A DNA stretch of 64,000 bases from Macrostomum lignano (Eukaryota): positions 1 through 64,000 of the forward strand of contig NIVC01000054.1 of assembly GCA_002269645.1 (NCBI GenBank). The letters run 5' to 3'. Shown here one piece after another: positions 13,674 through 64,000 of this stretch. Each line of letters starts with the position of its first letter. The stretch's first letter is position 1. Under the pieces are notes generated by a model. It ran no database searches. It worked only from the letters and a program-made list of their open reading frames with translations, and was not told the DNA's origin. Position numbers and translations under genes: made by a program.

Positions 13674-13780
13674 GTATGATACCTACTACTTACAGTAGAC
13701 TTGATTGAAAACGCGAGCATTGGTGCAAAAATTCTATTCAGCTATTGATAGTAGCATTTTACAAAATTTTAGCCACTCAC

Positions 13781-14139
13781 TTGTAGACCGGAGCCGCGAT
13801 TATGTTCAGGAAGTTGACCTGCAGCTGCGGGATGTCCGCCTTGTCCCTGTCCATGCCCTCCGCCGGCTGCTTGCCCAGCGATTTCTCTTTGTCACCAAGG
13901 CTGAAGAACTCCTGATAGATGAGCTTAGCAACCTGCCTGGTGTTCTTCCACACCTTGGTCTGGTCGCTGAGGTCCGAGGCGGTCATGAGCAGGCAGAGCA
14001 TGAGGTAGCGGTGCTGCTGCTTGGACCAGTCCGGGCCCGACTCAGCCACCGCATCGATTTCAGACTTGATTTTCAAGTGGTGCGCCAGGTCCGTGGCCAG
14101 GATGATGTCACGGATGATGTCCAGCACGGCTGAGTACTC
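13781..14139 (-). CDS. PDE2A: PDE2 catalytic domain exon (DIILATDLAHHL...LLMTASDLSDQTK...DIPQLQVNF...PVYK)
   Basis: Near-identical motifs to PDE2A incl. ATDL, metal-ligand D of SDL, invariant Gln and clamp Phe; cag/gtgagt sites. Confidence 0.96.
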
Positions 14140-14189
14140 CTGAGGGGAGGGCGGCACTCCAGCTGATCACTGCCAACTGTGCAATCTTG

Positions 14190-14870
14190 AAGCTGGACTT
14201 CAGTAAGCCAAGCTGGACTTCAGTAAGCCAAGCTGGACTTCAGTAAGCCAAGCTGGACTTCAGTAAGCCAAGCTGGACTTCAGGACAAAACTGAACTTCA
14301 GGATACTAAACTGGACTTCAGAACACTAAACTAGACTTCAGGACACTAAAATGGACTTCAGGACACTAAACTGGACTTCAGGACACTAAGCTGGATTTCA
14401 GGACACTAAACTGGACTTCAGGACACTAAGCTGGATTTCAGGACACTAAACTGGACTTCAGGACACTAAACTGGACTTCAGGACACTAAACTAGACTTCA
14501 GGACACTAAAATGGACTTCAGAACACTAAACTAGACTTCAGGACACTAAAATGGACTTCAGGACACTAAACTAGGCTTCAGGACACTAAACTGGACTTCA
14601 GAACACTAAACTAGACTTCATGACACTAAAATGGACTTCAGGACACTAAACTGGACTTCAGGACACTAAGCTGGATTTCAGGACACTAAACTGGACTTCA
14701 GGACACTAAGCTGGATTTCAGGACACTAAACTGGACTTCAGGACACTAAACTGGACTTCAGGACACTAAGCTGGATTTCAGGACACTAAACTGGACTTCA
14801 GGACACTAAACTGGACTTCAGGACACTAAACTGGATTTCAGGACACTAAGCTGAACTTCAGGATACTAAA
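14190..14870. repeat. 20-bp minisatellite GGACACTAAACTGGACTTCA with a sub-array AGCTGGACTTCAGTAAGCCA
   Basis: Direct reading. Confidence 0.95.
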
Positions 14871-14911
14871 CTGGAGTAGCCAAGTAAACAGATAGCAAGA
14901 GAATCGCTCAC

Positions 14912-15215
14912 CTTCTCAGACAAATTCTCGAACACATTGCAGCCCTCCCTGTTGAGGATACACACAGTCTGGGAGAAGTGGTGGCGCTCCAGCACCGAGC
15001 CCTCGGAGCTGTACAGGCCCGATAGAGCCGAGCCGCTCGAGTTCTCAAAGGAGTTGTTGGTGCCGCGGTGGTCAATGTCGTGACAGAGCGAGGCCACCAG
15101 AAAAGAGAAGTACTCCAGCGGGGTCAGGCACTTGTCCAGTCGCAGGTTCTTCAGGCACAGGTAGGTGAAGTGCGCCACGGAGAATGCGTGAGACCAGTTG
15201 TGGTAGGGCGGGTCC
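14912..15215 (-). CDS. PDE2A: PDE2 catalytic domain exon ([13 protein letters not shown]...[13 protein letters not shown]...[13 protein letters not shown])
   Basis: YHN..H and HD.DHRGTNN class I PDE signature; YSSEGSV is PDE2-specific; phases consistent. Confidence 0.97.
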
Positions 15216-15261
15216 CTGCGGAGTGCGGTTCGGGTGCAGGATCACCAGAGACATTGGCAGC

Positions 15262-15600
15262 CCAAATCCCATGCACCTATGATCCCACAATGAAATCCCA
15301 AATCCTACAATAAAATCCCAAATCCCAAATCCTACAATCAAATCCCGAACCCCACAATGAAATCCCAAATCCCACATTCAAATCAAATCCCACAATGAAA
15401 TCCCAAATCCCACAATCAAATCCGAAATCCCAAAATGAAATCGCAAATCCCACAATAAAATCTCGAATCCTACAATGAAATCCCAAATCCCATATATCAA
15501 AGATCCCAGAATGAAATCGCAAATCCCATTTATCAAAGATCCCACAATGAAATCCCAAATCCCATGCATCAAAGATCCCACAATAGGATCCCAAATCCCA
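15262..15600. repeat. AAATCCC-based degenerate minisatellite
   Basis: Direct reading. Confidence 0.9.
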
Positions 15601-15615
15601 GCCCACTTCCCCAAC

Positions 15616-15917
15616 CTGTATCCCTTCCTGGCCAGCAGCACAAAGCGAGCCAGGGTGGTGCGGCGGATGCGCCAGGTTTTGGTGAGCTTGAGGTCGTCAA
15701 ACATCTGCACGACCGCTGAGCAGCTGTCGGCCTCCACAATGTCCCGGGGCACCGACACGAACTGGTCGAAGTGCGGGCAGAATTCGTCAAGCCGTCGCAC
15801 GGCAGCGTTCGCCAGGTCGTACACCGCGCGCTCGGGCACGTGCATGTGGTAGGTCATCAGCTCGGTGGCCAGCTGGTGCCGGGCCTGGGCCGCCTGCACC
15901 CTCTTGTACATCAGCGA
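15616..15917 (-). CDS. PDE2A: PDE2 exon, GAF-B/catalytic linker (SLMYKRVQAAQARHQLATELMTYHM...RFVLLARKGY)
   Basis: Matches PDE2A [25 protein letters not shown]; ccgcag / AG|gttggg. Confidence 0.95.
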
Positions 15918-19602: not shown

Positions 19603-21560
19603 CTGTTCCTCCCCTCCTCTGTTCCTCCCCTCCCCTGTTCCTCCCATCCCCTGTTCCTTCCCTCCCCTGTTCCTCCCCTCCTCTGTTCCTCCCTCCCCTG
19701 TTCCTCCCATCCCCTGTTCCTTCCCTCCCCTGTTCCTCCCCTCCCCTGTTCCTCCCCTCCCCTGTTCCTCCCCTCCCCTGTTCCTCCCTCCCCTGTTCCT
19801 CCCTCCCCTGATCCTCCCTCCCCTGTTCCTCCCTCCCCTGTTCCTCCCTCACTGTTCCTCCCATCCCCTGTTCCTCCCTCTGTTCCTCCCCTCCCCTGTT
19901 CCTTCCCTCCCTGTTCCTCTCATCCCTTTCCTCCCCTCTCTGTTCCTCCCCTCTCTGTTCCTCCCTCTCTGTTCCTCCCTCTCTGTTCCTCCCCTCTCTG
20001 TTCCTCCCTCCCCTGTTCCTCCCCTCCCCTGTTCCTCCCCTCCCCTGTTCTTCCCCTCTCTGTTCCTCCCCTCTCTGTTCCTCCCTCCCTGTTCTTCCCC
20101 TCTCTGTTCTTCCCCTCTCTGTTCCTCCCCTCTCTGTTCCTCCCATCCCCTGTTCCTCCCCTCTGTTCCTCCCCTCTCTGTTCCTCCCTTCTCTGTTCTT
20201 CCCCTCTCTGTTCCTCCCCTCTCTGTTCCTCCCTTCTCTGTTCTTCCCCTCTCTGTTCCTCCCTCTCTGTTCCTCCCCTCTCTGTTCCTCCCCTCTCTGT
20301 TCCTCCCTCTCTGTTCCTCCCCTCTCTGTTCTTCCCCTCTCTGTTCCTCCCATCCCCTGTTCTTCCCCTCTCTGTTCCTCCCCTCTATGTTCCTCCCCTC
20401 CCTGTTCTTCCCCTCTCTGTTCTTCCCCTCTCTGTTCCCCCCTCTCTGTTCCTCCCATCCCCTGTTCCTCCCCTCTGTTCCTCCCCTCTCTGTTCCTCCC
20501 TTCTCTGTTCTTCCCCTCTCTGTTCCTCCCCTCTCTGTTCCTCCCCTCTCTGTTCTTCCCCTCTCTGTTCCTCCCCTCTCTGTTCCTCCCCTCTCTGTTC
20601 CTCCCTCTCTGTTCCTCCCTCTCCGTTCCTCCCCTCTCTGTTCCTCCCCTCTCTGTTCTTCCCCTCTCTGTTCCTCCCCTCCCCTGTTCTTCCCCTCTCT
20701 GTTCCTCCCTCTCTGTTCCTCCCCTCTCTGTTCCTCCCTCTCTGTTCCTCCCCTCTCTGTTCCTCCCCTCTCTGTTCCTCCCCTCCCCTGTTCTTCCCCT
20801 CTCTGTTCCTCCCCTCTCTGTTCCTCCCTCCCTGTTCTTCCCCTCTCTGTTCTTCCCCTCTCTGTTCCTCCCCTCTCTGTTCCTCCCATCCCCTGTTCCT
20901 CCCCTCTGTTCCTCCCCTCTCTGTTCCTCCCCTCCCCTGTTCTTCCCCTCTCTGTTCCTCCCTCTCTGTTCCTCCCTCTCTGTTCCTCCCCTCTCTGTTC
21001 CTCCCCTCTCTGTTCCTCCCTCTCTGTTCCTCCCTCTCTGTTCCTCCCTCTCTGTTCTTCCCCTCTCTGTTCCTCCCATCCCCTGTTCTTCCCCTCTCTG
21101 TTCCTCCCCTCTCTGTTCCTCCCCTCCCTGTTCTTCCCCTCTCTGTTCTTCCCCTCTCTGTTCCTCCCCTCTCTGTTCCTCCCATCCCCTGTTCCTCCCC
21201 TCTGTTCCTCCCCTCTCTGTTCCTCCCCTCTCTGTTCTTCCCCTCTCTGTTCCTCCCCTCTCTGTTCCTCCCCTCTTTGTTCTTCCCCTCTCTGTTCCTC
21301 CCCTCTCTGTTCCTCCCCTCTCTGTTCCTCCCCTCTCTGTTCCTCCCCTCTCTGTTCCTCCCCTCTCTGTTCCTCCCCTCTCTGTTCTTCCCCTCTCTGT
21401 TCCTCCCCTCTCTGTTCCTCCCATCCCCTGTTCCTCCCCTCTGTTCCTCCCCTTTCTGTTCCTCCCTTCTCTGTTCTTCCCCTCTCTGTTCCTCCCCTCT
21501 CTGTTCCTCCTCTCTCTGTTCCTCCCTCTCTGTAACTCCCCTCTCTGTTCCTACCTCCCC
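19603..21560. repeat. ~16-17-bp polypyrimidine minisatellite (CTGTTCCTCCCCTCT), ~2 kb
   Basis: Direct reading. Confidence 0.97.
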
Positions 21561-21587
21561 GATCCTCCCCTCCCCCGCCAGTCTCAC

Positions 21588-38565: not shown

Positions 38566-39960
38566 GCTAGTCACTCATCTAGTCACTAATCTAGTCACTC
38601 TTCTAGTCACTCATCTAGTCACTTATTTAGTCACTTATCTAGTCACTTATCTAGTCATTTATTTAGTCACTCATCTAGTCACTTATCTAGTCACTTATCT
38701 AGTCACTTATCTAGTCACTTATCTAGTCACTTATTTAGTCACTTATCTAGTCACTTATCTAGTCACTTATTTAGTCACTTATCTAGTCACTTATCTAGTC
38801 ACTTATCTAGTCACTTATTTAGTCACTCATCTAGTCACTTATTTAGTCATTTATTTAGTCACTCATCTAGTCACTTATCTAGTCACTTATTTAGTCACTC
38901 ATCTAGTCACTTATTTAGTCATTTATTTAGTCACTCATCTAGTCACTTATCTAGTCACTTATTTAGTCACTCATCTAGTCACTTATCTAGTCATTTATTT
39001 AGTCATTGATCTAGTCACTGATCTAGTCACTGATCTAGTCACTCTTCTAGTCACTTATTTAGTCACTTATCTAGTCACTTATCTAGTCATTTATTTAGTC
39101 ACTCATCTAGTCACTTATCTAGTCACTTATCTAGTCACTTATCTAGTCACTTATCTAGTCACTTATTTAGTCACTTATCTAGTCACTTATCTAGTCATTT
39201 ATTTAGTCACTCATCTAGTCACTTATCTAGTCACTTATTTAGTCACTCATCTAGTCACTTATCTAGTCATTTATTTAGTCACTCATCTAGTCACTTATCT
39301 AGTCACTTATCTAGTCACTTATCTAGTCACTTATCTAGTCACTTATTTAGTCACTTATCTAGTCACTTATCTAGTCACTTATCTAGTCATTTATTTAGTC
39401 ACTCATCTAGTCACTTATCTAGTCACTTATCTAGTCACTTATCTAGTCACTTATCTAGTCACTTATTTAGTCACTTATCTAGTCACTTATCTAGTCACTT
39501 ATTTAGTCACTTATCTAGTCACTTATCTATTCACTTATTTAGTCACTCATCTAGTCACTTATTTAGTCATTTATTTAGTCACTCATCTAGTCACTTATCT
39601 AGTCACTTATTTAGTCATTTATTTAGTCACTCATCTAGTCACTTATCTAGTCACTTATTTAGTCACTCATCTAGTCACTTATCTAGTCATTTATTTAGTC
39701 ACTCATCTAGTCACTTATCTAGTCACTTATCTAGTCATTGATCTAGTCACTGATCTAGTCACTTATCTAGTCATTGATCTAGTCACTGATCTAGTCACTG
39801 ATCTAGTCACTTATCTAGTCACTGATCTAGTCATTGATCTAGTCATTGATCTAGTCATTGATCTAGTCATTGATCTAGTCATTGATCTAGTCACTGATCT
39901 AGTCACTTATCTGTCACTTATCCGGCCAGTCACTCCGGCCAGTCACTCCGGCCAGTCACT
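38566..39960. repeat. 12-bp minisatellite AGTCACTTATCT, ~1.4 kb
   Basis: Direct reading. Confidence 0.97.
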
Positions 39961-51200: not shown

Positions 51201-51936
51201 TAAATTAAATGCCGCTGTGCCAGCCTTGCTACCATAGACAAAAGCTCCATTGCATTGGCAAACGTATCTCGGATTAAATTCAATGCGCGTAAGCCCAAGA
51301 GGGCTGCAAAAAGCTATACGAACTGACATACTTTCATAGCTCTGGTAATTTCTGCACTTTTCGATTAGCAAAGCTGTTCATCGTTTGGATATTAAAAACT
51401 CTCGGTGGTCTTCTCCATAATTCACAAAATTAATTTGAAGCAAAATAGAGCTGGGCACACTGTAGCCCATTGTTAATGCGAATACGCCCAGCCTTATAAT
51501 ATATCAATAATTCAATCAGCACATCGCCGTGGAGGTGGCCCAATATTATAACTGTAAAAATCTGCTATGGATATAATAACTAATCGCTCTGAACCTGCCA
51601 ATCTTAGTTCTGTCTGCCAGGCAGTAGTTAATTCAGTTCTGAAGTCTGAAGCTTTTAAATAGATTGCTAAAACTCTGTTCGCAGTCCTGGCTTCATCAGA
51701 CAGTCTCACCCACAGAATATATTCTGTGGCCTCACCTGAACATTAATTATTCCTCTTCGATGGCATTATTCGAGCCAACTTGGACGGGATAAAAAACTCT
51801 GGCTTCAGCTTAAAAAGCTCGTGTGAAAGATCATTAGTATAGCATTGCTTTGATATTCGCCTGAGCGAAATATTTCTCACGGTAGTTGATCTTTGTTGAA
51901 GGTAACTCATCTGCTACCCCAGCTTCCAGCTTTCAC

Positions 51937-53182
51937 CCAGTTGGTTCCACACTTACCCCAGTTGGTTCCACACTTACCCCAGTTGGTTCCACACTTACCC
52001 CAGTTGGTTCCACACTTACCCCAGTTGGTTCCACACTTACCCCAGTTGGTTCCACACTTACCCCAGTTGGTTCCACACTTACCCCAGTTGGTTCCACACT
52101 TACCCCAGTTGGTTCCACACTTACCCCAGTTAGTTCCACACTTACCCCAGTTGGTTCCACACTTACCCCAGTTGGTTCCACACTTACCCCAGTTAGTTCC
52201 ACACTTACCCCAGTTGGTTCTACACTTACCCCAGTTGGTTCCACACTTACCCCAGTTGGTTCTACACTTACCCGAGTTGGTTCCACACTTACCCCAGTTT
52301 GTTCCACACTTACCCCAGTTGGTTCCACACTTACCCCAGTTGGTTCCACACTTACCCCAGTTGGTTCCACACTTACCCGAGTTGGTTCCACACTTACCCC
52401 AGTTGGTTCCACACTTACCCCAGTTGGTTCCACACTTACCCCAGTTAGTTCCACACTTACCCCAGTTGGTTCTACACTTACCCCAGTTGGTTCCACACTT
52501 ACCCCACTTGGTTCTACACTTACCCCAGTTGGTTCCACACTTACCCCAGTTGGTTCCACACTTACCCCAGTTGGTTCCACACTTACCCCAGTTGGTTCCA
52601 CACTTACCCCAGTTGGTTCCACACTTACCCCAGTTGGTTCTACACTTACCCCAGTTGGTTCCACACTTACCCCAGTTGGTTCCACACTTACCCCAGTTGG
52701 TTCCACACTTACCCCACTTGGTTCTACACTTACCCCAGTTGGTTCCACACTTACCCGAGTTGGTTCCACACTTACCCCAGTTAGTTCCACACTTACCCCA
52801 GTTGGTTCCACACTTACCCGAGTTGGTTCCACACTTACCCGAGTTGGTTCCACACTTACCCCAGTTGGTTCCACACTTACCCCAGTTGGTTTCACACTTA
52901 CCCCAGTTGGTTCCACACTTACCCCAGTTGGTTCCACACTTACCCCAGTTGGTTTCACACTTACCCCAGTTAGTTCCACACTTACCCCAGTTGGTTCCAC
53001 ACTTACCCCAGTTGGTTCCACACTTACCCCAGTTGGTTCTACACTTACCCCAGTTGGTTCCACACTTACCCCAGTTGGTTCCACACTTACCCTAGTTAGT
53101 TCCACACTTACCCCAGTTAGTTCCACACTTACCCCAGTTGGTTCCACACTTCCCCCAGTTGGTTCCACACTTACCCCAGTTG
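51937..53182. repeat. 21-bp minisatellite CCCAGTTGGTTCCACACTTAC (~59 copies; minus strand carries G|GTAAGT)
   Basis: Direct reading. Confidence 0.97.
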
Positions 53183-54199
53183 GGTCCACCGCCCAGAGGA
53201 GTTAGCCAGTGCAGCCAGCTATGCATAATTAATGATGCAGCGCGAAGGAGTCGAATGTCGCCGTTACAGCTTGGCCCGACAAGTGAGGGCCAATTTGTCA
53301 CAAAATTACAATAAAACCGACGTGAATGTCGTAAAGCAGTGCTTTTTTCACCGCATCCGATGACGTGCGCAATAACCAGGCTCCCCGCTGCGCCTCGGGT
53401 TCATTATACTGCTGCATGCGCGCGCCGATACACTTTCCCAAGTCTAGATAGCGGCCTTGCTTTCCCTGAATCATTTTCTCTCTTTCCATTTCTCGGCAAT
53501 CTCCTCCCTCGCTATACTGCAGCTGCATTCCAGCCTGTGTGAAAGTTTTTCTTGTCCAAGCACCAGCTTACTAGTATAGCTTAGCAACAGATTCACCTTC
53601 GCCCTCGGTGAAGGAAGTCAGTTGGCCAGCGGGGTTGGGGGGCAGTCAGTTTATTATCAGCATCAAGTCGGTGGGTCCAGCAGCCTTCCGTATCCCCTCA
53701 GCACTGATTGGTCCCAGCACTGAGAGAGGAGGGAGCGCAGAGAATAGAGACTTTTTCAAGACGAAAATAATTGCATCGCGTGGAGCCCATGCCTCCCATC
53801 CGGTAGCGCACTTCATTCTCGGGTGCTGACAACTGTGTTTGGGAGCATTCCGGAGGCAATAGAAGCTGTGTTATAATTTATCTCAATTGATATTTCTTCT
53901 AATCTCTCTATTGGCCAGTTACTATAATATTAGAGCAGCAGGTGCCTGCTATTCTCTGCATTTGACAGCTTTGCATTGTAAGTGCAAGTGGGTCGGTTGG
54001 ATCCGTTTATGATTTATTACTGTTATTACTACAGCCGTTATTTATCTTGGGAATATTGGGAGCTATTTTCTAGGGAATTGTTTCTCGTGCAATTGTGCAT
54101 CTACTTTATTATGAGTTAAAAGCGTACATTTTAAGGGGGCGCAAGTGTTTGTAAGGCGTTTGGTTTCTGAATTGCTGTTAGTAGTGACTACTAACATCC

Positions 54200-57768: not shown

Positions 57769-59393
<1,625 letters not shown>

Positions 59394-59892: not shown

Positions 59893-60750
59893 GGCTCGGG
59901 ACTCGGGACTCGGGACTCGGGACTCGGGACTCGGGACTCGGGACTCGGGACTCGGGACTCGGGACTCGGGACTCGGGACTCGGGACTCGGGACTCGGGAC
60001 TCGGGACTCGGGACTCGGGACTCGGGACTCGGGACTCGGGACTCGGGACTCGGGACTCGGGACTCGGGACTCGGGACTCGGGACTCGGGACTCGGGACTC
60101 GGGACTCGGGACTCGGGACTCGGGACTCGGGACTCGGGACTCGGGACTCGGGACTCGGGACTCGGGACTCGGGACTCGGGACTCGGGACTCGGGACTCGG
60201 GACTCGGGACTCGGGACTCGGGACTCGGGACTCGGGACTCGGGACTCGGGACTCGGGACTCGGGACTCGGGACTTGGGACTCGGGACTCGGGACTCGGGA
60301 CTCGAGACTCGGGACTCGGGACTCGGGACTCGGGACTCGGGACTCGGGACTCGGGACTCGGGACTCGGGACTCGGGACTCGGGACTCGGGACTCGGGACT
60401 CGGGACTCGGGACACGGGACTCGGGACTCGGGACTCGGGACTCGGGACACGGGACTCGGGACTCGGGACTCGGGACTCGGGACTCGGGACTCGAGAATCG
60501 GGACTCGGGACTCGGGACTCGGGACTCGGGACTCGGGACTTGGGACTCGGGACTCGGGACTCGGGACTCGGGACTCGGGACTCGGGACTCGGGACTCGGG
60601 ACACGGGACTCGGGACTCGGGACTCGGGACTCGGGACACGGGACTCGGGACTCGGGACTCGGGACTCGGGACTCGGGACTCGAGAATCGGGACTCGGGAC
60701 TCGGGACTCGGGACTCGGGACTCGGGACTCGGGACTCGGGACTCGGGACT
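59893..60750. repeat. 7-bp G-rich array (GGGACTC)n
   Basis: Direct reading. Confidence 0.97.
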
Positions 60751-61223
60751 CAAAAAATTAGGATTTAGGACTCGGGACTTGGGATACAGGCCTCGAGAAT
60801 CAGGACTCAGGATTCGGGACTCTAACCGCCTGAGATTTAGCGGATGCCCCTAATTTACTTTGGGAAGCGCGCAAAGCCAGAAGCATCCAACCAACCCCCG
60901 CATCATGGGGAAGTCGGAGAATCCCCTCTGCAAATGCGAACCCCGGAACCTCTGTATCTGGCTGGCAAGAGCCGCCATTTGCATTCATTCATTTAGGAGC
61001 GGCTGCAGTTTATTCCACATCCACTGCACTGACTGACTGGCCGACTTTCTCCCCCTATCCCTACCGCTTCTGAAGGGCTCGATAGCACTTACCGGCTTTA
61101 AACGGCTTTTCTTTCTTAAATTGACCCCCCTCTTTTGCACCTGAAAAGAGACCGCAAACTTTTTCCTTTGCTGACCATTAGCCATCGAAAGGAGGTCGAC
61201 TTCTCCGGTCGGTGCCCCTCCAG

Positions 61224-61943
61224 CCTCCGAAGGGATGCCACGGCAGAAGCAGCAGGGCCTGAGCGACTCCAATACCCAGCCGCCGCTCCTGCCGCCACCG
61301 CCTCCCCCGGCTCCGCCGCCACCGCCGTCGCAAACTCAGCGGCCTTCGCCGTCGCCTTCGCCCTCGCCGCCGCCTCCGCCGCCGCCCCAGCAGCAGCCGA
61401 AGCTGCAGCCGCACCATCTGGAAGACATCTGCGAAGCCGCGGCCAACATGCACTTCATTGACGATGGCTCGCTCGACGAGCTCATGGCCGACATCGAGGA
61501 CGCTGACGTCCTGAGCCTCATTCGCGTCAACGTCGGCGGCAGACGCTTCGAGGTGCTCAAATCGACGCTGATGCGGCAGCACTTCATCTACGAAAAGCTG
61601 CTGCACGACGGCGTGTACAGGGCGGGCCAGGAGGAATACTTCTTCGACCGCGACCCCACCGTGTTCAACATCGTGCTGTGGTACTGCCGCTACGGCGAGC
61701 TGCACGTGCCCCACCACCTGTGCGGCCCGCTGCTGGAGCGGGAGCTTGCCCTCTGGGGCATCCAGCCGGCTATTGAGATTCAGAACTGCTGCGTGAGCCA
61801 CCTGATGGACACTAAAAGCCGATTAATCAGTCTGAAGCAGTTTGAGAACTTCTTCAAAGAGGAGATGGAAACGGAGCCGGTGGTGCCGCTGGACTGCATA
61901 GAGAACGACGATTTTGGCGGTCCGACATCCAACAGCTCCAAGG
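61224..61943 (+). CDS. Shaw: Shaw/Kv3 channel exon 2: poly-Pro linker plus T1 tetramerisation domain
   Basis: VNVGG..F, EYFFDRDP, ELH.....CGPL...EL..WGI......CC (Kv3-type Zn motif); ctccag / G|gtgaga. Confidence 0.93.
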
Positions 61944-61977
61944 GTGAGAATTTCGGGCACGGAGCACAGGGGGATGG

Positions 61978-62464
61978 CCAGGGACTAGCGATGAGTCGGA
62001 TCCCTCAGGGACTAGCAATGAGTCGGCTCCCTCAGGGACTAGCAATGAGTCGGATCCCTCAGGGACTAGCGATGAGTCGTATCCCTCAGGGACTAGCAAT
62101 GAGTCGACTCCCTCAGGGACTAGCGATGAGTCGGATCCCTCAGGGACTAGCGATGAGTCGGATCCCTCAGGGACTAGCGATGAGTCGTATCCCTCAGGGA
62201 CTAGCGATGAGTCGGATCCCTCAGGGACTAGCGATGAGTCGGATCCCTCAGGGACTAGCAATGAGTCGGCTCCCTCAGGGACTAGCAATGAGTCGACTCC
62301 CTCAGGGACTAGCGATGAGTCGGATCCCTCAGGGACTAGCGATGAGTCGGATCCCTCAGGGACTAGCGATGAGTCGTATCCCTCAGGGACTAGCGATGAG
62401 TCGGATCCCTCAGGGACTAGCGATGAGTCGGATCCCTCAGGGACTAGCGATGAGTCGACTCCCT
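61978..62464. repeat. 27-bp minisatellite CAGGGACTAGCGATGAGTCGGATCCCT in Kv intron 2
   Basis: Direct reading. Confidence 0.97.
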
Positions 62465-62677
62465 CCTTGAAATGGCGCTGGAAGTTCCATTTAAGCAAGG
62501 GGCTCAGCGGTAAACTTACGACCCTGGTTCGACCCCGTGTCCGGCCACATTAATTTGGGACTTGTGCTCAATGGCCTCAGGCAACTCACACCCTCTAGGG
62601 CCAACCCCAAGGCACAGAGGATGAGAAAGGCGGGGCTGCTGTACATCCAACTCACCGAGGCAGTTCAACACCCTCAG

Positions 62678-63225
62678 GCTGGCAGAGAGTCAAAGCTTTC
62701 TTGGCCTCGCTGCGTCGGCGCTGCTGGAAGATTCTCGACCATCCGTCGTCGGGCTTCCCGGCGACCGTGTACGCGGTGCTTCTGACCATCACGGTTCTGT
62801 ACGCGGTGTTCAGCTTCGTCGCAAGCACGTCGGAGCAGTTCCAGCGGCTGCTGACCCAGCGAGAGATCCAGTTCTACTCCAACAAGCACCCCTCCTGGTA
62901 CGGCAACCACACGGACGCGCAGACCCGGATCAAAGCCGATTGGCTGGTCTTCTCCGACTGGTTCGCCTTCGGCGTGCTCACCTTCGACTTCCTGGTGCGT
63001 CTGCTGTGCTGCAAGAACAAGCTGGCCTACTTCAAGAACGCCTACACCGTGATCGACCTGCTCTCCATCCTTCCGTTCTACGTGAACGAGCTGCTGAAGC
63101 TCACCTGGGGCATCATCGAATTCTCCGAGCCTAACAGCTTCGGGGTGACTGAGTACATCGCCTTCCTGAAGATCTCGCTGTTCGTCAGGCTGCTCAGAAT
63201 CGGTCGGCACTATCGAGGACTGCAG
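62678..63225 (+). CDS. Shaw: Shaw/Kv3 channel exon 3: S1-S4
   Basis: WKILDHPSS, DFLVR (S2), IDLLSILPFY (S3), FVRLLRIGRH (S4); cctcag / CAG|gtgcgt. Confidence 0.93.
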
Positions 63226-63640
63226 GTGCGTCTGCTCTGCCATGTACCTTGAAAACGGTTTGTTTCTAATCGTTGTGACTCTCACTGTAAGATTCTCAGT
63301 GGGCATTGTGATGCTTTTTCAAGCATAACTTTCGACTGGGGAATGACCAAAATGTGCCTCTTCAAAATGGCAACAAAGTTGAGATGGCAGCTGCTTCCGT
63401 TTTTGTTCTGAGATTAAAAAATGTCAGAACTTCCCGGACAGCCCCTTGCACCATTGAGCCTTTCATCAGCTGCTGTGGAAAAGTTTTAGAAGGACACGCA
63501 AATCAATTTTCTCTGTTTCCAGTCTTCAATCCAAACCAGTACAAAAGCTTCCCAAGGAGCCAAAAATCACAGGCACTTCATCAACTCTTTGTAATTGATT
63601 GTTCTTTTACTAATCTTCTCTGACCCTCCCGCCCGCGCAG

Positions 63641-63935
63641 GTGCTCATCTACACGTTGAAAACGTCGCTCCGCGACCTCATGCTTATGGGCGTGTTCGTG
63701 GCGCTCGGCACCCTGCTGTTCAGCACGCTGATCTTCTTCTGCGAGAAGTCGCGCAGCGGCGGCGAGACGCACCTGGCCCCGACAGCGCCGCCCGACAAGA
63801 AAAAAGTCGACTGCTCAAAGTGTCAGAAAGGTGACACCGATTCGAAGTTCAACTCCATGTTCGACGGCTTCTGGTGGTCGCTGGTTACTATGACAACTGT
63901 TGGATACGGAGACCTGGTGCCGCAGACCAGCTCAG
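63641..63935 (+). CDS. Shaw: Shaw/Kv3 channel exon 4: S4-S5 linker, S5, turret, pore (FWWSLVTMTTVGYGDLVPQT); gene continues past the window
   Basis: K+ filter TTVGYGD; cgcgcag acceptor; 3' boundary (G|gtcggg) less certain. Confidence 0.92.
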
Positions 63936-64000
63936 GTCGGGCTCTGAGACCTTCTGTTTTTATAAGAAACTAATCCGCTACCTAGATTAGCGGTCCACTT

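What the first reader, a model, noticed from the sequence alone, without database searches (positions are those of the whole stretch)
62770..63225. Shaw/Kv3 channel with a remodelled voltage sensor: candidate natural gating-pore (omega) or voltage-insensitive channel
Seen: S4 is YIA-FLK-ISL-FVR-LLR-IGR-H versus Kv3.1 FLR-VVR-FVR-ILR-IFK-LTR-H. Anchored on RH, R1 becomes A and R3 becomes L; the alternative alignment gives R2 to L plus a 3-residue deletion. S2 is SDWFAFGVLTFDFLVR versus IEGVCVVWFTFEFLMR, so the charge-transfer-centre Phe (Shaker F290) is Leu and both acidic residues are shortened to Asp. The S1 'LET' Glu is Ser (AST). The TVGYG filter is intact. Known: neutralising S4 charges opens gating-pore currents, and (from memory) the flatworm channel N.at-Kv3.2 has neutral residues at S4 positions 1 and 3 and a natural omega current. 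Invertebrate Shaw already has only four S4 charges, so the pattern plus plug loss, not the count, is what is unusual.
Basis: partly seen in the sequence, partly recalled or inferred. Interest (0 to 1): 0.75.

Follow-up and report, generated by a model that had tools for sequence, protein, structure and literature searches.

The report
Flatworm Shaw potassium channel, remodelled voltage sensor
This is a real, conserved potassium-channel gene of the flatworm Macrostomum lignano whose voltage sensor lacks two usual positive charges; the pattern is shared by a flatworm-wide channel subfamily that includes major parasites, and what it does to gating is untested.

Summary
Window 62770-63225 is S1-S4 of exon 2 of a Shaw/Kv3-family K+ channel gene (+ strand; exons 61235-61943, 62678-63225, 63641-63935; S6 lies beyond the window). 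The organism is Macrostomum lignano (99% identical to BOX15_Mlig014518g2).

- The pattern is a clade trait. Monogenean, trematode (Schistosoma, Fasciola, Paragonimus) and cestode relatives share K at R2, an aliphatic residue at R3, Asp at E293 and Ser at the S1 Glu.
- This clade is distinct from an "H..R..G" flatworm clade that matches the published description of N.at-Kv3.2.
- Neutral R1, E283D and loss of the S1 Glu are common in invertebrate Shaw channels. The distinctive changes are R3→L, E293→D and F290→L.
- "Plug loss" is overstated: a rare Phe sits one helical turn above, at the Shaker I287 position.

S4 is as conserved as the pore, so the sensor is functional. My best guess is a K+-selective channel with reduced gating charge. 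A gating-pore current remains a live minority hypothesis (~0.2). Electrophysiology is needed.

The parts
61235..61943 (+). Exon 1: start codon, Pro-rich low-complexity N-terminus, T1 (BTB_2) tetramerisation domain and a post-T1 helix. Ends in phase 1 (AAG G|GTGAGA).
   Evidence: Identical exon in L001 and P0001.
61700..61792 (+). T1 zinc-site motif of non-Shaker Kv channels: H-x5-C-x21-CC (LHVPHHLCGPLLERELALWGIQPAIEIQNCC). The C-to-CC spacer is one residue longer than in Kv3.1.
   Evidence: Read from the translation. Aligned to the Kv3.1 T1 domain.
61944..62677 (+). Intron 1. It contains a 27-bp minisatellite (61979-62465) with 18 copies here and 9 in the second genomic copy.
   Evidence: The acceptor CCCTCAG|GC restores the frame.
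62678..63225 (+). Exon 2: pre-S1 helix and the whole voltage-sensor domain S1-S4.
62755..62826 (+). S1 (FPATVYAVLLTITVLYAVFSFVAS). V280 sits at the Shaker-I241 position. S286 (AGC 62824-62826) sits at the Shaker-E247 / Kv3.1 'LET' Glu position.
62941..63012 (+). S2 (WLVFSDWFAFGVLTFDFLVRLLCC). D330 = E283 position, F334 = I287 position, L337 = F290 (charge-transfer-centre Phe) position, D340 = E293 position. R344 is conserved.
63040..63102 (+). S3 (AYTVIDLLSILPFYVNELLKL), with the conserved countercharge D363 (Shaker D316 position).
63151..63219 (+). S4 (EYIAFLKISLFVRLLRIGRHYRG). E395 = 'R0', A398 = R1, K401 = R2, L404 = R3, R407 = R4, R410 = K5, R413 = R6, R416 = K7 position.
63226..63640 (+). 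Intron 2 (phase 0, GTGCGT...CGCGCAG), between S4 and the S4-S5 linker.
63641..63935 (+). Exon 3: S4-S5 linker, S5, a long turret insertion with a D-C-S-K-C motif, the pore helix and the filter. The donor is TCAG|GTCGGG. The gene continues beyond the window; exon 4 (S6 and C-terminus) lies about 2.2 kb downstream in the second copy L001.
63893..63913 (+). Selectivity filter TTVGYGD, canonical for K+ selectivity. It is followed by L-V-P, with Val at the Shaker-T449 / Kv3.1-Tyr external TEA site.

Best explanation
The region encodes the voltage-sensor domain of a functional alpha-subunit gene of the Shaw (Kv3) family in Macrostomum lignano. It belongs to a flatworm-specific subfamily, which I call the 'K-phi clade', present in Macrostomorpha, Monogenea, Trematoda and Cestoda.

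The clade's ancestral sensor is remodelled as follows:
- Ser instead of the S1 Glu.
- Asp at both S2 acidic positions.
- An uncharged residue at R1.
- Lys at R2.
- An aliphatic residue (L/I/V) at R3.
- R4, K5 (as Arg) and R6 retained, plus an extra Arg at the K7 position.

In the Macrostomum branch the charge-transfer-centre Phe has become Leu, while a Phe appears one turn further out.

Shown: gene structure, family assignment, conservation, an intact T1 zinc site, filter and S6, and strong constraint on S4.

Inferred: the protein tetramerises through T1 and conducts K+ through the canonical pore. Its sensor still moves, but with fewer effective gating charges (K401, R407, R410, R413) and a lowered barrier at the charge-transfer centre. 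Gating is therefore expected to be shallow in voltage and probably shifted, giving a weakly voltage-dependent, Shaw-like K+ conductance rather than a steep Kv3-type delayed rectifier. Conduction through the sensor itself is possible but is not the leading expectation.
For: - Family and organism.
- Intact gene: canonical splice sites and a second genomic copy 97-98.7% identical including introns. There are 8 synonymous and 7 non-synonymous codon differences, and none lie in S1-S4.
- Paralog comparison: paralog P0002 is 72% identical overall. S4 is 90% identical, S4-S5 plus S5 92%, filter 100% and S6 94%. Loops are 22-61% identical.
- Clade-wide signature: the same pattern appears in Protopolystoma, Paragonimus, Schistosoma (a 22-member cluster), Fasciola, Calicophoron and Mesocestoides. 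A shared post-T1 motif, CCxxxxMDTKSxLxSLxKFE, also appears in Echinococcus.
- Phylogeny: the NJ tree recovers the clade with 61.5% bootstrap support.
- Countercharges and R4/K5 are invariant in the clade; R6 is Arg except in the two cestode-type sequences (Gln).
- Hydrophobic septum: positions V280, F334 and L337 are all hydrophobic.
- Literature: F233L/F290L lowers the barrier for charge transfer by about 10 kJ/mol in simulation. It either shifts activation by -40 to -50 mV or is near wild type. F233 substitutions do not create omega currents (PMC3477161).
Against: - No functional data exist for any member of this clade.
- The only characterised flatworm Shaw channel with neutral R1 and R3, N.at-Kv3.2, conducts through the gating pore despite an intact canonical pore. 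Pore conservation therefore does not prove that the pore is the working pathway.
- In that channel the A/A combination at R1/R3 (H325A+G331A) was still an inward rectifier (Table 1).
- R1=Ala together with E283→Asp is the combination that enlarges omega current in Shaker (PMC3982104).
- The direction and size of any voltage shift cannot be predicted from sequence.
Confidence: 0.5

Rival explanations
1. Natural gating-pore (omega) channel. With a small Ala at R1, Asp at E283, Leu at R3 and no aromatic at the canonical charge-transfer position, the sensor leaks cations in one or more S4 positions, as N.at-Kv3.2 does. The canonical pore contributes little at physiological voltages.
For: [quoted passage not shown] Its H325A+G331A mutant remains an inward rectifier.
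- Shaker R362A/C/S/V give omega currents, and E283D enlarges them.
- The flatworm clade matching N.at-Kv3.2 also has E293→D and the same S4-S5 linker GLQVLIYTL as this gene.
- That clade is the nearest neighbour in the NJ tree, though with only 39% bootstrap support.
Against: - R3 here is a bulky Leu, not Gly.
- In N.at-Kv3.2 the single mutant H325A (Ala at R1 with Gly at R3) became a delayed rectifier, so the phenotype is finely context-dependent.
- The septum residues V280, F334 and L337 are all hydrophobic.
- F233/F290 substitutions do not cause omega currents.
- A non-basic R1 is the norm in the invertebrate Shaw proteins sampled (377 of 451). To my knowledge the characterised members (Drosophila Shaw, Aplysia, C. 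elegans) show no omega current.
- K401 can seal the constriction at rest.
- The gene is outside the HG clade, which has 100% bootstrap support.
Confidence: 0.2
2. Electrically silent or modulatory subunit. The protein does not form conducting homotetramers. It co-assembles with other Shaw-type subunits of the worm and shifts their gating, as vertebrate KvS or cnidarian regulatory subunits do.
For: - M. lignano carries several divergent Shaw-like paralogs (P0002; P0222/P0453).
- Trematodes carry at least two, for example Calicophoron P0186 and P0189.
- The sensor is atypical while the pore and T1 are conserved.
Against: - The T1 zinc motif, filter, pore helix and S6 V-P hinge are intact.
- The T1 domain is itself clade-specific (42-47% identical within the clade), which fits self-assembly.
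- Nothing in the sequence marks it as assembly-deficient.
Confidence: 0.15
3. Voltage-insensitive, constitutively open K+ leak. The sensor is locked, for example in the up state, and no longer gates the pore.
For: - Two of the outer charges are missing.
- The S1 acidic residue is lost.
- The barrier residue is changed to Leu.
Against: - Four to five basic S4 residues and all three inner countercharges are conserved across flatworm classes.
- S4 is as constrained as the pore. This would not be expected for a sensor that no longer senses.
Confidence: 0.1
4. Degenerating pseudogene, sequencing error or gene-model artefact.
For: - Each key substitution is one nucleotide away from the canonical codon.
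- Several database models of this locus are wrong (P0003, P0004).
Against: - The exons are open with GT-AG introns.
- The key codons are identical in two genomic copies.
- The same residues are present in a 72% paralog, and equivalent residues in distant flatworms.
Confidence: 0.02

Closest known systems
N.at-Kv3.2 of the polyclad flatworm Notoplana atomata (Klassen et al. 2008, PMC2443804)
   Same: - Flatworm Shaw/Kv3-family channel with an intact GYG pore.
- Non-basic residues at S4 positions R1 and R3.
- Asp at the first S2 acidic position.
- The clade I infer to be N.at-Kv3.2-type also shares E293→Asp, the S4-S5 linker GLQVLIYTL and the S6 sequence AFTVPILVNxFMLYYSH.
   Different: - Residues differ: H/G there, A/L here.
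- R2 is Arg there and Lys here.
- F290 and the S1 Glu are kept there and changed here.
- S3 Asp→Glu there, not here.
- Tyr at the external TEA site there, Val here.
- It is a separate clade (HG 100% bootstrap; the two together only 39%).
- The N.at-Kv3.2 sequence itself could not be retrieved. The link rests on the H..R..G motif and the exact 65-residue spacing from D (E1) to H (R1), which matches D260 to H325.
Human Kv3.1 / KCNC1 (PDB 7phh, 7pqt)
   Same: - Best sequence match (E 6.7e-50) and best fold match.
- Same architecture: T1 with a zinc site, S1-S6, TxGYGD.
   Different: - Only about 30% identical.
- Kv3.1 has all six S4 charges, Glu at both S2 sites, the charge-transfer Phe and the S1 Glu.
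- It has no long turret insertion.
Drosophila Shaw and other invertebrate Shaw channels
   Same: - Reduced S4 charge.
- Non-basic R1.
- Same family.
   Different: - Shaw lacks R1 and R2 (E, S) but keeps R3, Phe and both Glu.
- Here the gap lies inside the charge ladder, at R3 between K401 and R407.
Shaker R362A/C with or without E283D (engineered omega pore; Tombola et al. 2005, as summarised in PMC3982104)
   Same: - Small residue at R1.
- Asp at the first S2 acid.
   Different: - Engineered on a full-charge Shaker background.
- Here R0 is Glu, R2 is Lys and R3 is Leu, with a different septum.
KCNQ1/Kv7 sensors (from my own knowledge: Gln at R3)
   Same: Natural Kv sensor with a neutral R3 that still gates with voltage.
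   Different: - Different family, with no T1 domain.
- A polar Gln rather than an aliphatic residue.
- The charge-transfer Phe is retained.

Membership tests
Shaw / Kv3 family of voltage-gated K+ channels | Closest to Kv3/Shaw rather than Kv1, Kv2 or Kv4 by sequence and by fold. | tested here: met
   Kv3.1 E 6.7e-50, against Kv2.1 1e-34, Kv1.2 about 1e-32 and Kv4 about 1e-29. Database neighbours are named Shaw / KCNC. Foldseek ranks Kv3.1 first.
Shaw / Kv3 family of voltage-gated K+ channels | N-terminal T1 domain with the non-Shaker zinc motif HX5C...CC. | tested here: met
   BTB_2 E 2.6e-18. H-x5-C-x21-CC at 61700-61792, one residue longer than in Kv3.1.
Shaw / Kv3 family of voltage-gated K+ channels | Six transmembrane segments with a K+ filter T-x-G-Y-G-D and an S6 V-P hinge. 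| tested here: met
   TTVGYGD at 63893-63913. S6 ...AFTVPILVNHF is taken from the 99% identical P0001, because S6 is outside the window.
Shaw / Kv3 family of voltage-gated K+ channels | Regular S4 ladder with basic residues at R3-R6. | tested here: not met
   R3 is Leu (L404). R3 is basic in 410 of 451 family sensors. R4-R6 are present. This marks a divergent subfamily; it does not exclude the protein from the family.
N.at-Kv3.2-type natural omega channel | His at R1 and Gly at R3 (H325, G331). | tested here: not met
   Ala and Leu here. The H..R..G motif is present in a different flatworm clade.
N.at-Kv3.2-type natural omega channel | Orthology with N.at-Kv3.2. | tested here: not met
   The HG clade has 100% bootstrap support and excludes this gene. 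N.at-Kv3.2 itself was not available, so HG = N.at-Kv3.2-type is inferred from the motif and the 65-residue spacing.
N.at-Kv3.2-type natural omega channel | Non-basic residues at both R1 and R3. | tested here: met
   A398 and L404.
N.at-Kv3.2-type natural omega channel | Poorly selective, TEA-insensitive, 4-AP-sensitive inward current through the sensor. | not testable with these tools
   Requires electrophysiology.
Silent (modulatory) Kv subunits | No homomeric current; obligate heteromerisation. | not testable with these tools
   Sequence shows an intact T1, filter and S6 hinge, which neither proves nor excludes this.
Flatworm 'K-phi' Shaw subfamily (defined here) | The signature has three parts:
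- S1 Ser.
- S2 D...[L/I/F]..D.
- S4 x-K-[L/I/V]-R-R-R with Arg at K7, plus the post-T1 motif MDTKSxLxSLxKFE. | tested here: met
   NJ clade support is 61.5%.

The most novel reading that the evidence does not exclude
The whole flatworm K-phi subfamily, from free-living Macrostomum to Schistosoma, Fasciola, Paragonimus and tapeworms, would be a second, independently remodelled lineage of natural gating-pore channels. Together with the N.at-Kv3.2-type clade, this would make conduction through a voltage sensor an ancient and conserved physiological mechanism in Platyhelminthes rather than a one-off curiosity.
Probability: 0.2. Interest if true: 0.8.

Novelty: new variant of a known kind. Interest (0 to 1): 0.55.

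Why it matters
According to a 2014 review (PMC3982104), natural gating-pore conduction is known only from Hv1 and a single flatworm channel, N.at-Kv3.2. This gene shows that loss of the R3 charge in Shaw-type sensors is not a singleton. It is fixed in a subfamily spanning at least four flatworm classes, and it is accompanied by coordinated changes in the charge-transfer centre.

That provides a set of natural 'experiments' on how a Kv sensor works with a hydrophobic gap in its charge ladder: L, I or V at R3; F, L or I at the F290 position; and Phe relocated to the I287 position.

Orthologues exist in medically and veterinary important flukes and tapeworms and have no close counterpart in vertebrates (about 30% identity to Kv3.1). 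An unusual permeation or gating mechanism would therefore also be of pharmacological interest.

If the channel turns out to be an ordinary weakly voltage-dependent K+ channel, the value is more modest. It would be a well-defined divergent subfamily and a caution against reading omega currents from S4 sequence alone.

Tried and rejected
1. Profile search for flatworm orthologues through the word-indexed search. The exhaustive representative search solved this.

I repeated it with exact substrings.

3. Retrieving N.at-Kv3.2 by name failed in all three homolog searches, all three cluster look-ups and the paper text. I identified its clade indirectly, through the H..R..G motif, the 65-residue D-to-H spacing and Tyr at the TEA site.

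4. I rejected the 3-residue-deletion alignment of S4 (phmmer). Multiple and profile alignments are gap-free from S4 through S5 in all family members.

5. I rejected pseudogene or sequencing error.

6. dN/dS against the 72% paralog could not be computed, because no DNA is on record for P0002. Only the near-identical copy could be compared (8 synonymous and 7 non-synonymous changes), and this is too few for a firm ratio.

7. The AlphaFold model returns no coordinates, so which S4 residue sits in the constriction, and whether a water path exists, could not be examined.

8. The NJ tree (Kimura distances, 255 columns) does not resolve whether the K-phi and HG clades are sisters (39%). No maximum-likelihood tree software was available.

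Full report
**What is at the coordinates**

The window is eukaryotic DNA that is rich in minisatellites. On the + strand near its 3' end lies a spliced gene.
- Exon 1 (61235-61943) starts at an ATG. It encodes a Pro-rich N-terminus and a T1 domain.
- Exon 2 (62678-63225) encodes the pre-S1 helix and S1-S4.
- Exon 3 (63641-63935) encodes the S4-S5 linker, S5, a long turret, the pore helix and the filter TTVGYGD.

All junctions are GT-AG and the phases are consistent. The gene runs off the window. In a second genomic copy the last exon (S6 and C-terminus) lies about 2.2 kb further on.

**Identity**

- Pfam finds Ion_trans, BTB_2 and Ion_trans_2.
- The best solved structure by sequence is human Kv3.1 (E 6.7e-50), well ahead of Kv2.1, Kv1.2 and Kv4.
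- An AlphaFold2 model (pLDDT 85.2, pTM 0.72) matches Kv3.1 best by fold.
- The protein is 99% identical to Macrostomum lignano BOX15_Mlig014518g2 (P0001, 649 aa). A 72% paralog (P0002) exists in the same species.
- Beyond Macrostomum, identity drops to about 30-35%, and all neighbours are Shaw/KCNC proteins.

This is a Shaw-family gene of the free-living flatworm M. lignano, and a very divergent one.

- S4 is EYIAFLKISLFVRLLRIGRHYRG.
- S2 is LVFSDWFAFGVLTFDFLVR.
- S1 ends in FVASTSEQF.

Pairwise phmmer puts a 3-residue gap into S4. MAFFT over 115 proteins and a profile-HMM alignment of 451 sensors are gap-free from S4 to S5. I therefore use the gap-free register:

| Residue | Position |
|---|---|
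| A398 | R1 |
| K401 | R2 |
| L404 | R3 |
| R407 | R4 |
| R410 | K5 |
| R413 | R6 |
| R416 | K7 |
| D330 | Shaker E283 |
| L337 | Shaker F290 |
| D340 | Shaker E293 |
| D363 | Shaker D316 |
| S286 | Shaker E247 |

The second genomic copy is L001 (NIVC01000052.1), 97-98.7% identical including introns. It differs at 8 synonymous and 7 non-synonymous codons, and none lie in S1-S4. The paralog has the same residues at every key position. Sequencing error and decay are excluded.

**How unusual is each change?**

It is redundant and biased towards relatives of my queries.

| Position | Distribution in the sample |
|---|---|
| R1 | basic in only 74 |
| First S2 acid (E283) | Asp in 207 |
| S1 Glu position | Lys in 125, Ser in 33 |
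| R3 | basic in 410 |
| F290 | Phe in 418 |
| E293 | Glu in 379, Asp in 69 |

R3→L, F290→L and E293→D are the real departures.

**A clade-level trait**

An exhaustive profile search of 1.84 billion representatives and cluster look-ups recovered relatives scoring above the general Shaw background. They come from these taxa:
- Protopolystoma (Monogenea).
- Paragonimus, Schistosoma (several species), Fasciola (annotated 'egl-36') and Calicophoron, with two genes (Trematoda).
- Mesocestoides and, for the T1 part, Echinococcus (Cestoda).
- Several unnamed assembly contigs.

They share a post-T1 motif, CCxxxxMDTKSxLxSLxKFE, and the following sensor signature:
- Ser at the S1 Glu position.
- Asp at E293.
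- Lys at R2.
- L, I or V at R3.
- Arg at R4, K5 and K7. R6 is Arg except in the two cestode-type sequences, where it is Gln.

The F290 position is L in Macrostomum and Protopolystoma, I in most trematodes, and F in cestodes and one Calicophoron gene.

A neighbour-joining tree (145 taxa, 255 core columns, 200 bootstraps) recovers this 'K-phi' clade with 61.5% support. The clade includes another M. lignano gene, P0222.

**Constraint**

Between the two M. lignano paralogs, identity by region is as follows.

| Region | Identity |
|---|---|
| S4 | 90% |
| S4-S5 plus S5 | 92% |
| Filter | 100% |
| S6 | 94% |
| Loops | 22-61% |

Across flatworm classes K401, R407, R410 and the three countercharges are invariant; R413 is Gln only in the two cestode-type sequences. 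The sensor is being maintained, not lost.

**Relation to N.at-Kv3.2**

I could not retrieve that sequence. A regex for H..[RK]..G..[RK]..[RK] found a second flatworm clade, which I call 'HG':
- It includes a Protopolystoma protein.
- Its S4 is vH..R..G..R..K..R.
- It has Asp at both S2 acids.
- It has Tyr at the TEA site, as the paper implies.
- In four of five members the spacing from the first S2 Asp to the His is exactly 65 residues, matching D260 to H325.

I take this to be the N.at-Kv3.2 type. It is a separate clade with 100% bootstrap support. It groups with the K-phi clade and two rotifer (Seison) genes, which also lack a basic R3, at only 39%. By raw similarity it is closer to molluscan Shaw-like proteins than to the K-phi clade. 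Whether R3 was lost once or twice in flatworms is unresolved.

**The 'plug'**

In M. lignano the residue at the Shaker-I287 position, one helical turn above F290 on the same face, is Phe. Phe is found there in only 13 of 451 sensors. The nearest non-Macrostomum relative, P0220, has an almost identical S4 and keeps the usual V/F arrangement.

With V280 in S1, the septum positions are V, F and L, all hydrophobic. Published simulation and mutagenesis work reports three things (PMC3477161):
- F233L/F290L lowers the charge-transfer barrier.
- It shifts activation negatively or is nearly neutral.
- F233 substitutions do not create omega currents.

So 'plug loss' is not established for this protein. 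The trematode orthologues (Ser/Ile at these positions) are the more radical case.

**Mechanism**

Shown: an intact, constrained Shaw-type subunit with a T1 zinc site, a K+ filter, an S6 hinge, and a sensor carrying K401, R407, R410, R413 and R416 against D330, D340 and D363.

Inferred: the sensor moves but transfers less charge. The state with L404 in the constriction has no charge to be stabilised by D340 and D363, so the step from K401 to R407 is probably concerted. Leu at the F290 position lowers the barrier. I therefore expect a K+-selective conductance with shallow, probably shifted, voltage dependence (confidence about 0.5).

The omega hypothesis keeps real support:
- Ala at R1 is omega-permissive in Shaker.
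- E283D enhances that current (PMC3982104).
- The N.at-Kv3.2 double mutant with Ala at both R1 and R3 stays an inward rectifier.

The same table also shows how fragile the phenotype is: H325A alone becomes a delayed rectifier. In addition, Leu is bulky, K401 can seal the resting state, and a neutral R1 is the family norm. I give omega about 0.2, a silent or modulatory subunit 0.15, a voltage-insensitive leak 0.1, and an artefact 0.02.

**Novelty**

The gene is in GenBank as a hypothetical protein. The family and the idea of a natural omega pore are known. Five full-text literature searches found no description of this flatworm-wide subfamily or of its sensor signature. The 2014 review still lists N.at-Kv3.2 and Hv1 as the only natural gating pores. 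I class the finding as a new variant of a known kind. It is interesting mainly because it turns a single odd channel into a testable, phylum-wide pattern.

Noticed in passing
window 13777-15911, minus strand: Exons of a 3',5'-cyclic nucleotide phosphodiesterase gene. ORFs 13777-14157(-) and 14858-15178(-) hit Pfam PDEase_I (E 4.6e-31 and 3.5e-29), with the HDIDHRG signature. ORF 15378-15911(-) looks like an upstream exon but has no Pfam hit.
   Followed up: partly
window, whole length; e.g. 19603-21572, 38567-39922, 51936-53189, 57772-59156, 59895-60751: The window is packed with minisatellites: 48 Tandem Repeats Finder rows with score >=300 and periods of 2-241 bp. A 7-bp (CTCGGGA) x122 array ends about 480 bp upstream of the channel's start codon. 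Many long mechanical ORFs in the window are just these repeats.
   Followed up: no
window 61979-62465 (intron 1 of the channel gene): A 27-bp minisatellite with 18 copies here and 9 copies in the otherwise 97-99% identical second genomic copy L001. Because 27 is a multiple of 3, the array stays open in the exon-1 frame (ORF 61235-62470) and could mislead gene callers.
   Followed up: partly
window 62678-63998; database models P0003, P0004, P0002: Public gene models of this locus are faulty. P0003 and P0004 match the window exactly but mis-splice exon 2 and read through the exon-3 donor (...GRALRPSVFIRN*). The paralog model P0002 retains an intron between the filter and S6.
   Followed up: yes
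window 62968-62979 (F334, L337): The aromatic residue of the S2 charge-transfer centre appears to have moved one helical turn outward in Macrostomum: Phe at the Shaker-I287 position and Leu at the F290 position. The closest outside relative, P0220, keeps Val/Phe. This is a possible compensatory swap.
   Followed up: partly
window 63746-63856: An unusually long S5-pore turret (about 37 residues) with a D-C-S-K-C motif conserved in the 72% paralog. It is absent from Kv3.1 and from the trematode and cestode relatives. The AlphaFold model has low confidence here.
   Followed up: no
related proteins P0199, P0248 (Seison nebaliae), P0197, P0244 (nematodes), P0196 (Lymnaea), P0420 (Haliotis): Other natural Shaw-family sensors without a basic R3: Q, T, C, C, M and N respectively. 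Seison P0248 also has Leu at the F290 position and no basic residue at R1-R3, which makes it an even more stripped sensor.
   Followed up: no
L002 799-2205 (ERZ25070786) and L003 697-1749 (ERZ27256860): The closest non-Macrostomum relative (P0220) and an HG-type protein (P0289) are each encoded by a single uninterrupted ORF from S1 to the C-terminus on metagenome contigs. The M. lignano gene has introns after S4 and after the filter. The source organisms are unknown.
   Followed up: partly
L001 15762-16478, minus strand (downstream of the gene, outside the window): In the second genomic copy, a glutathione S-transferase-like gene (GST_N_4 / GST_C) lies about 0.7 kb downstream of the channel's stop codon.
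   Followed up: no
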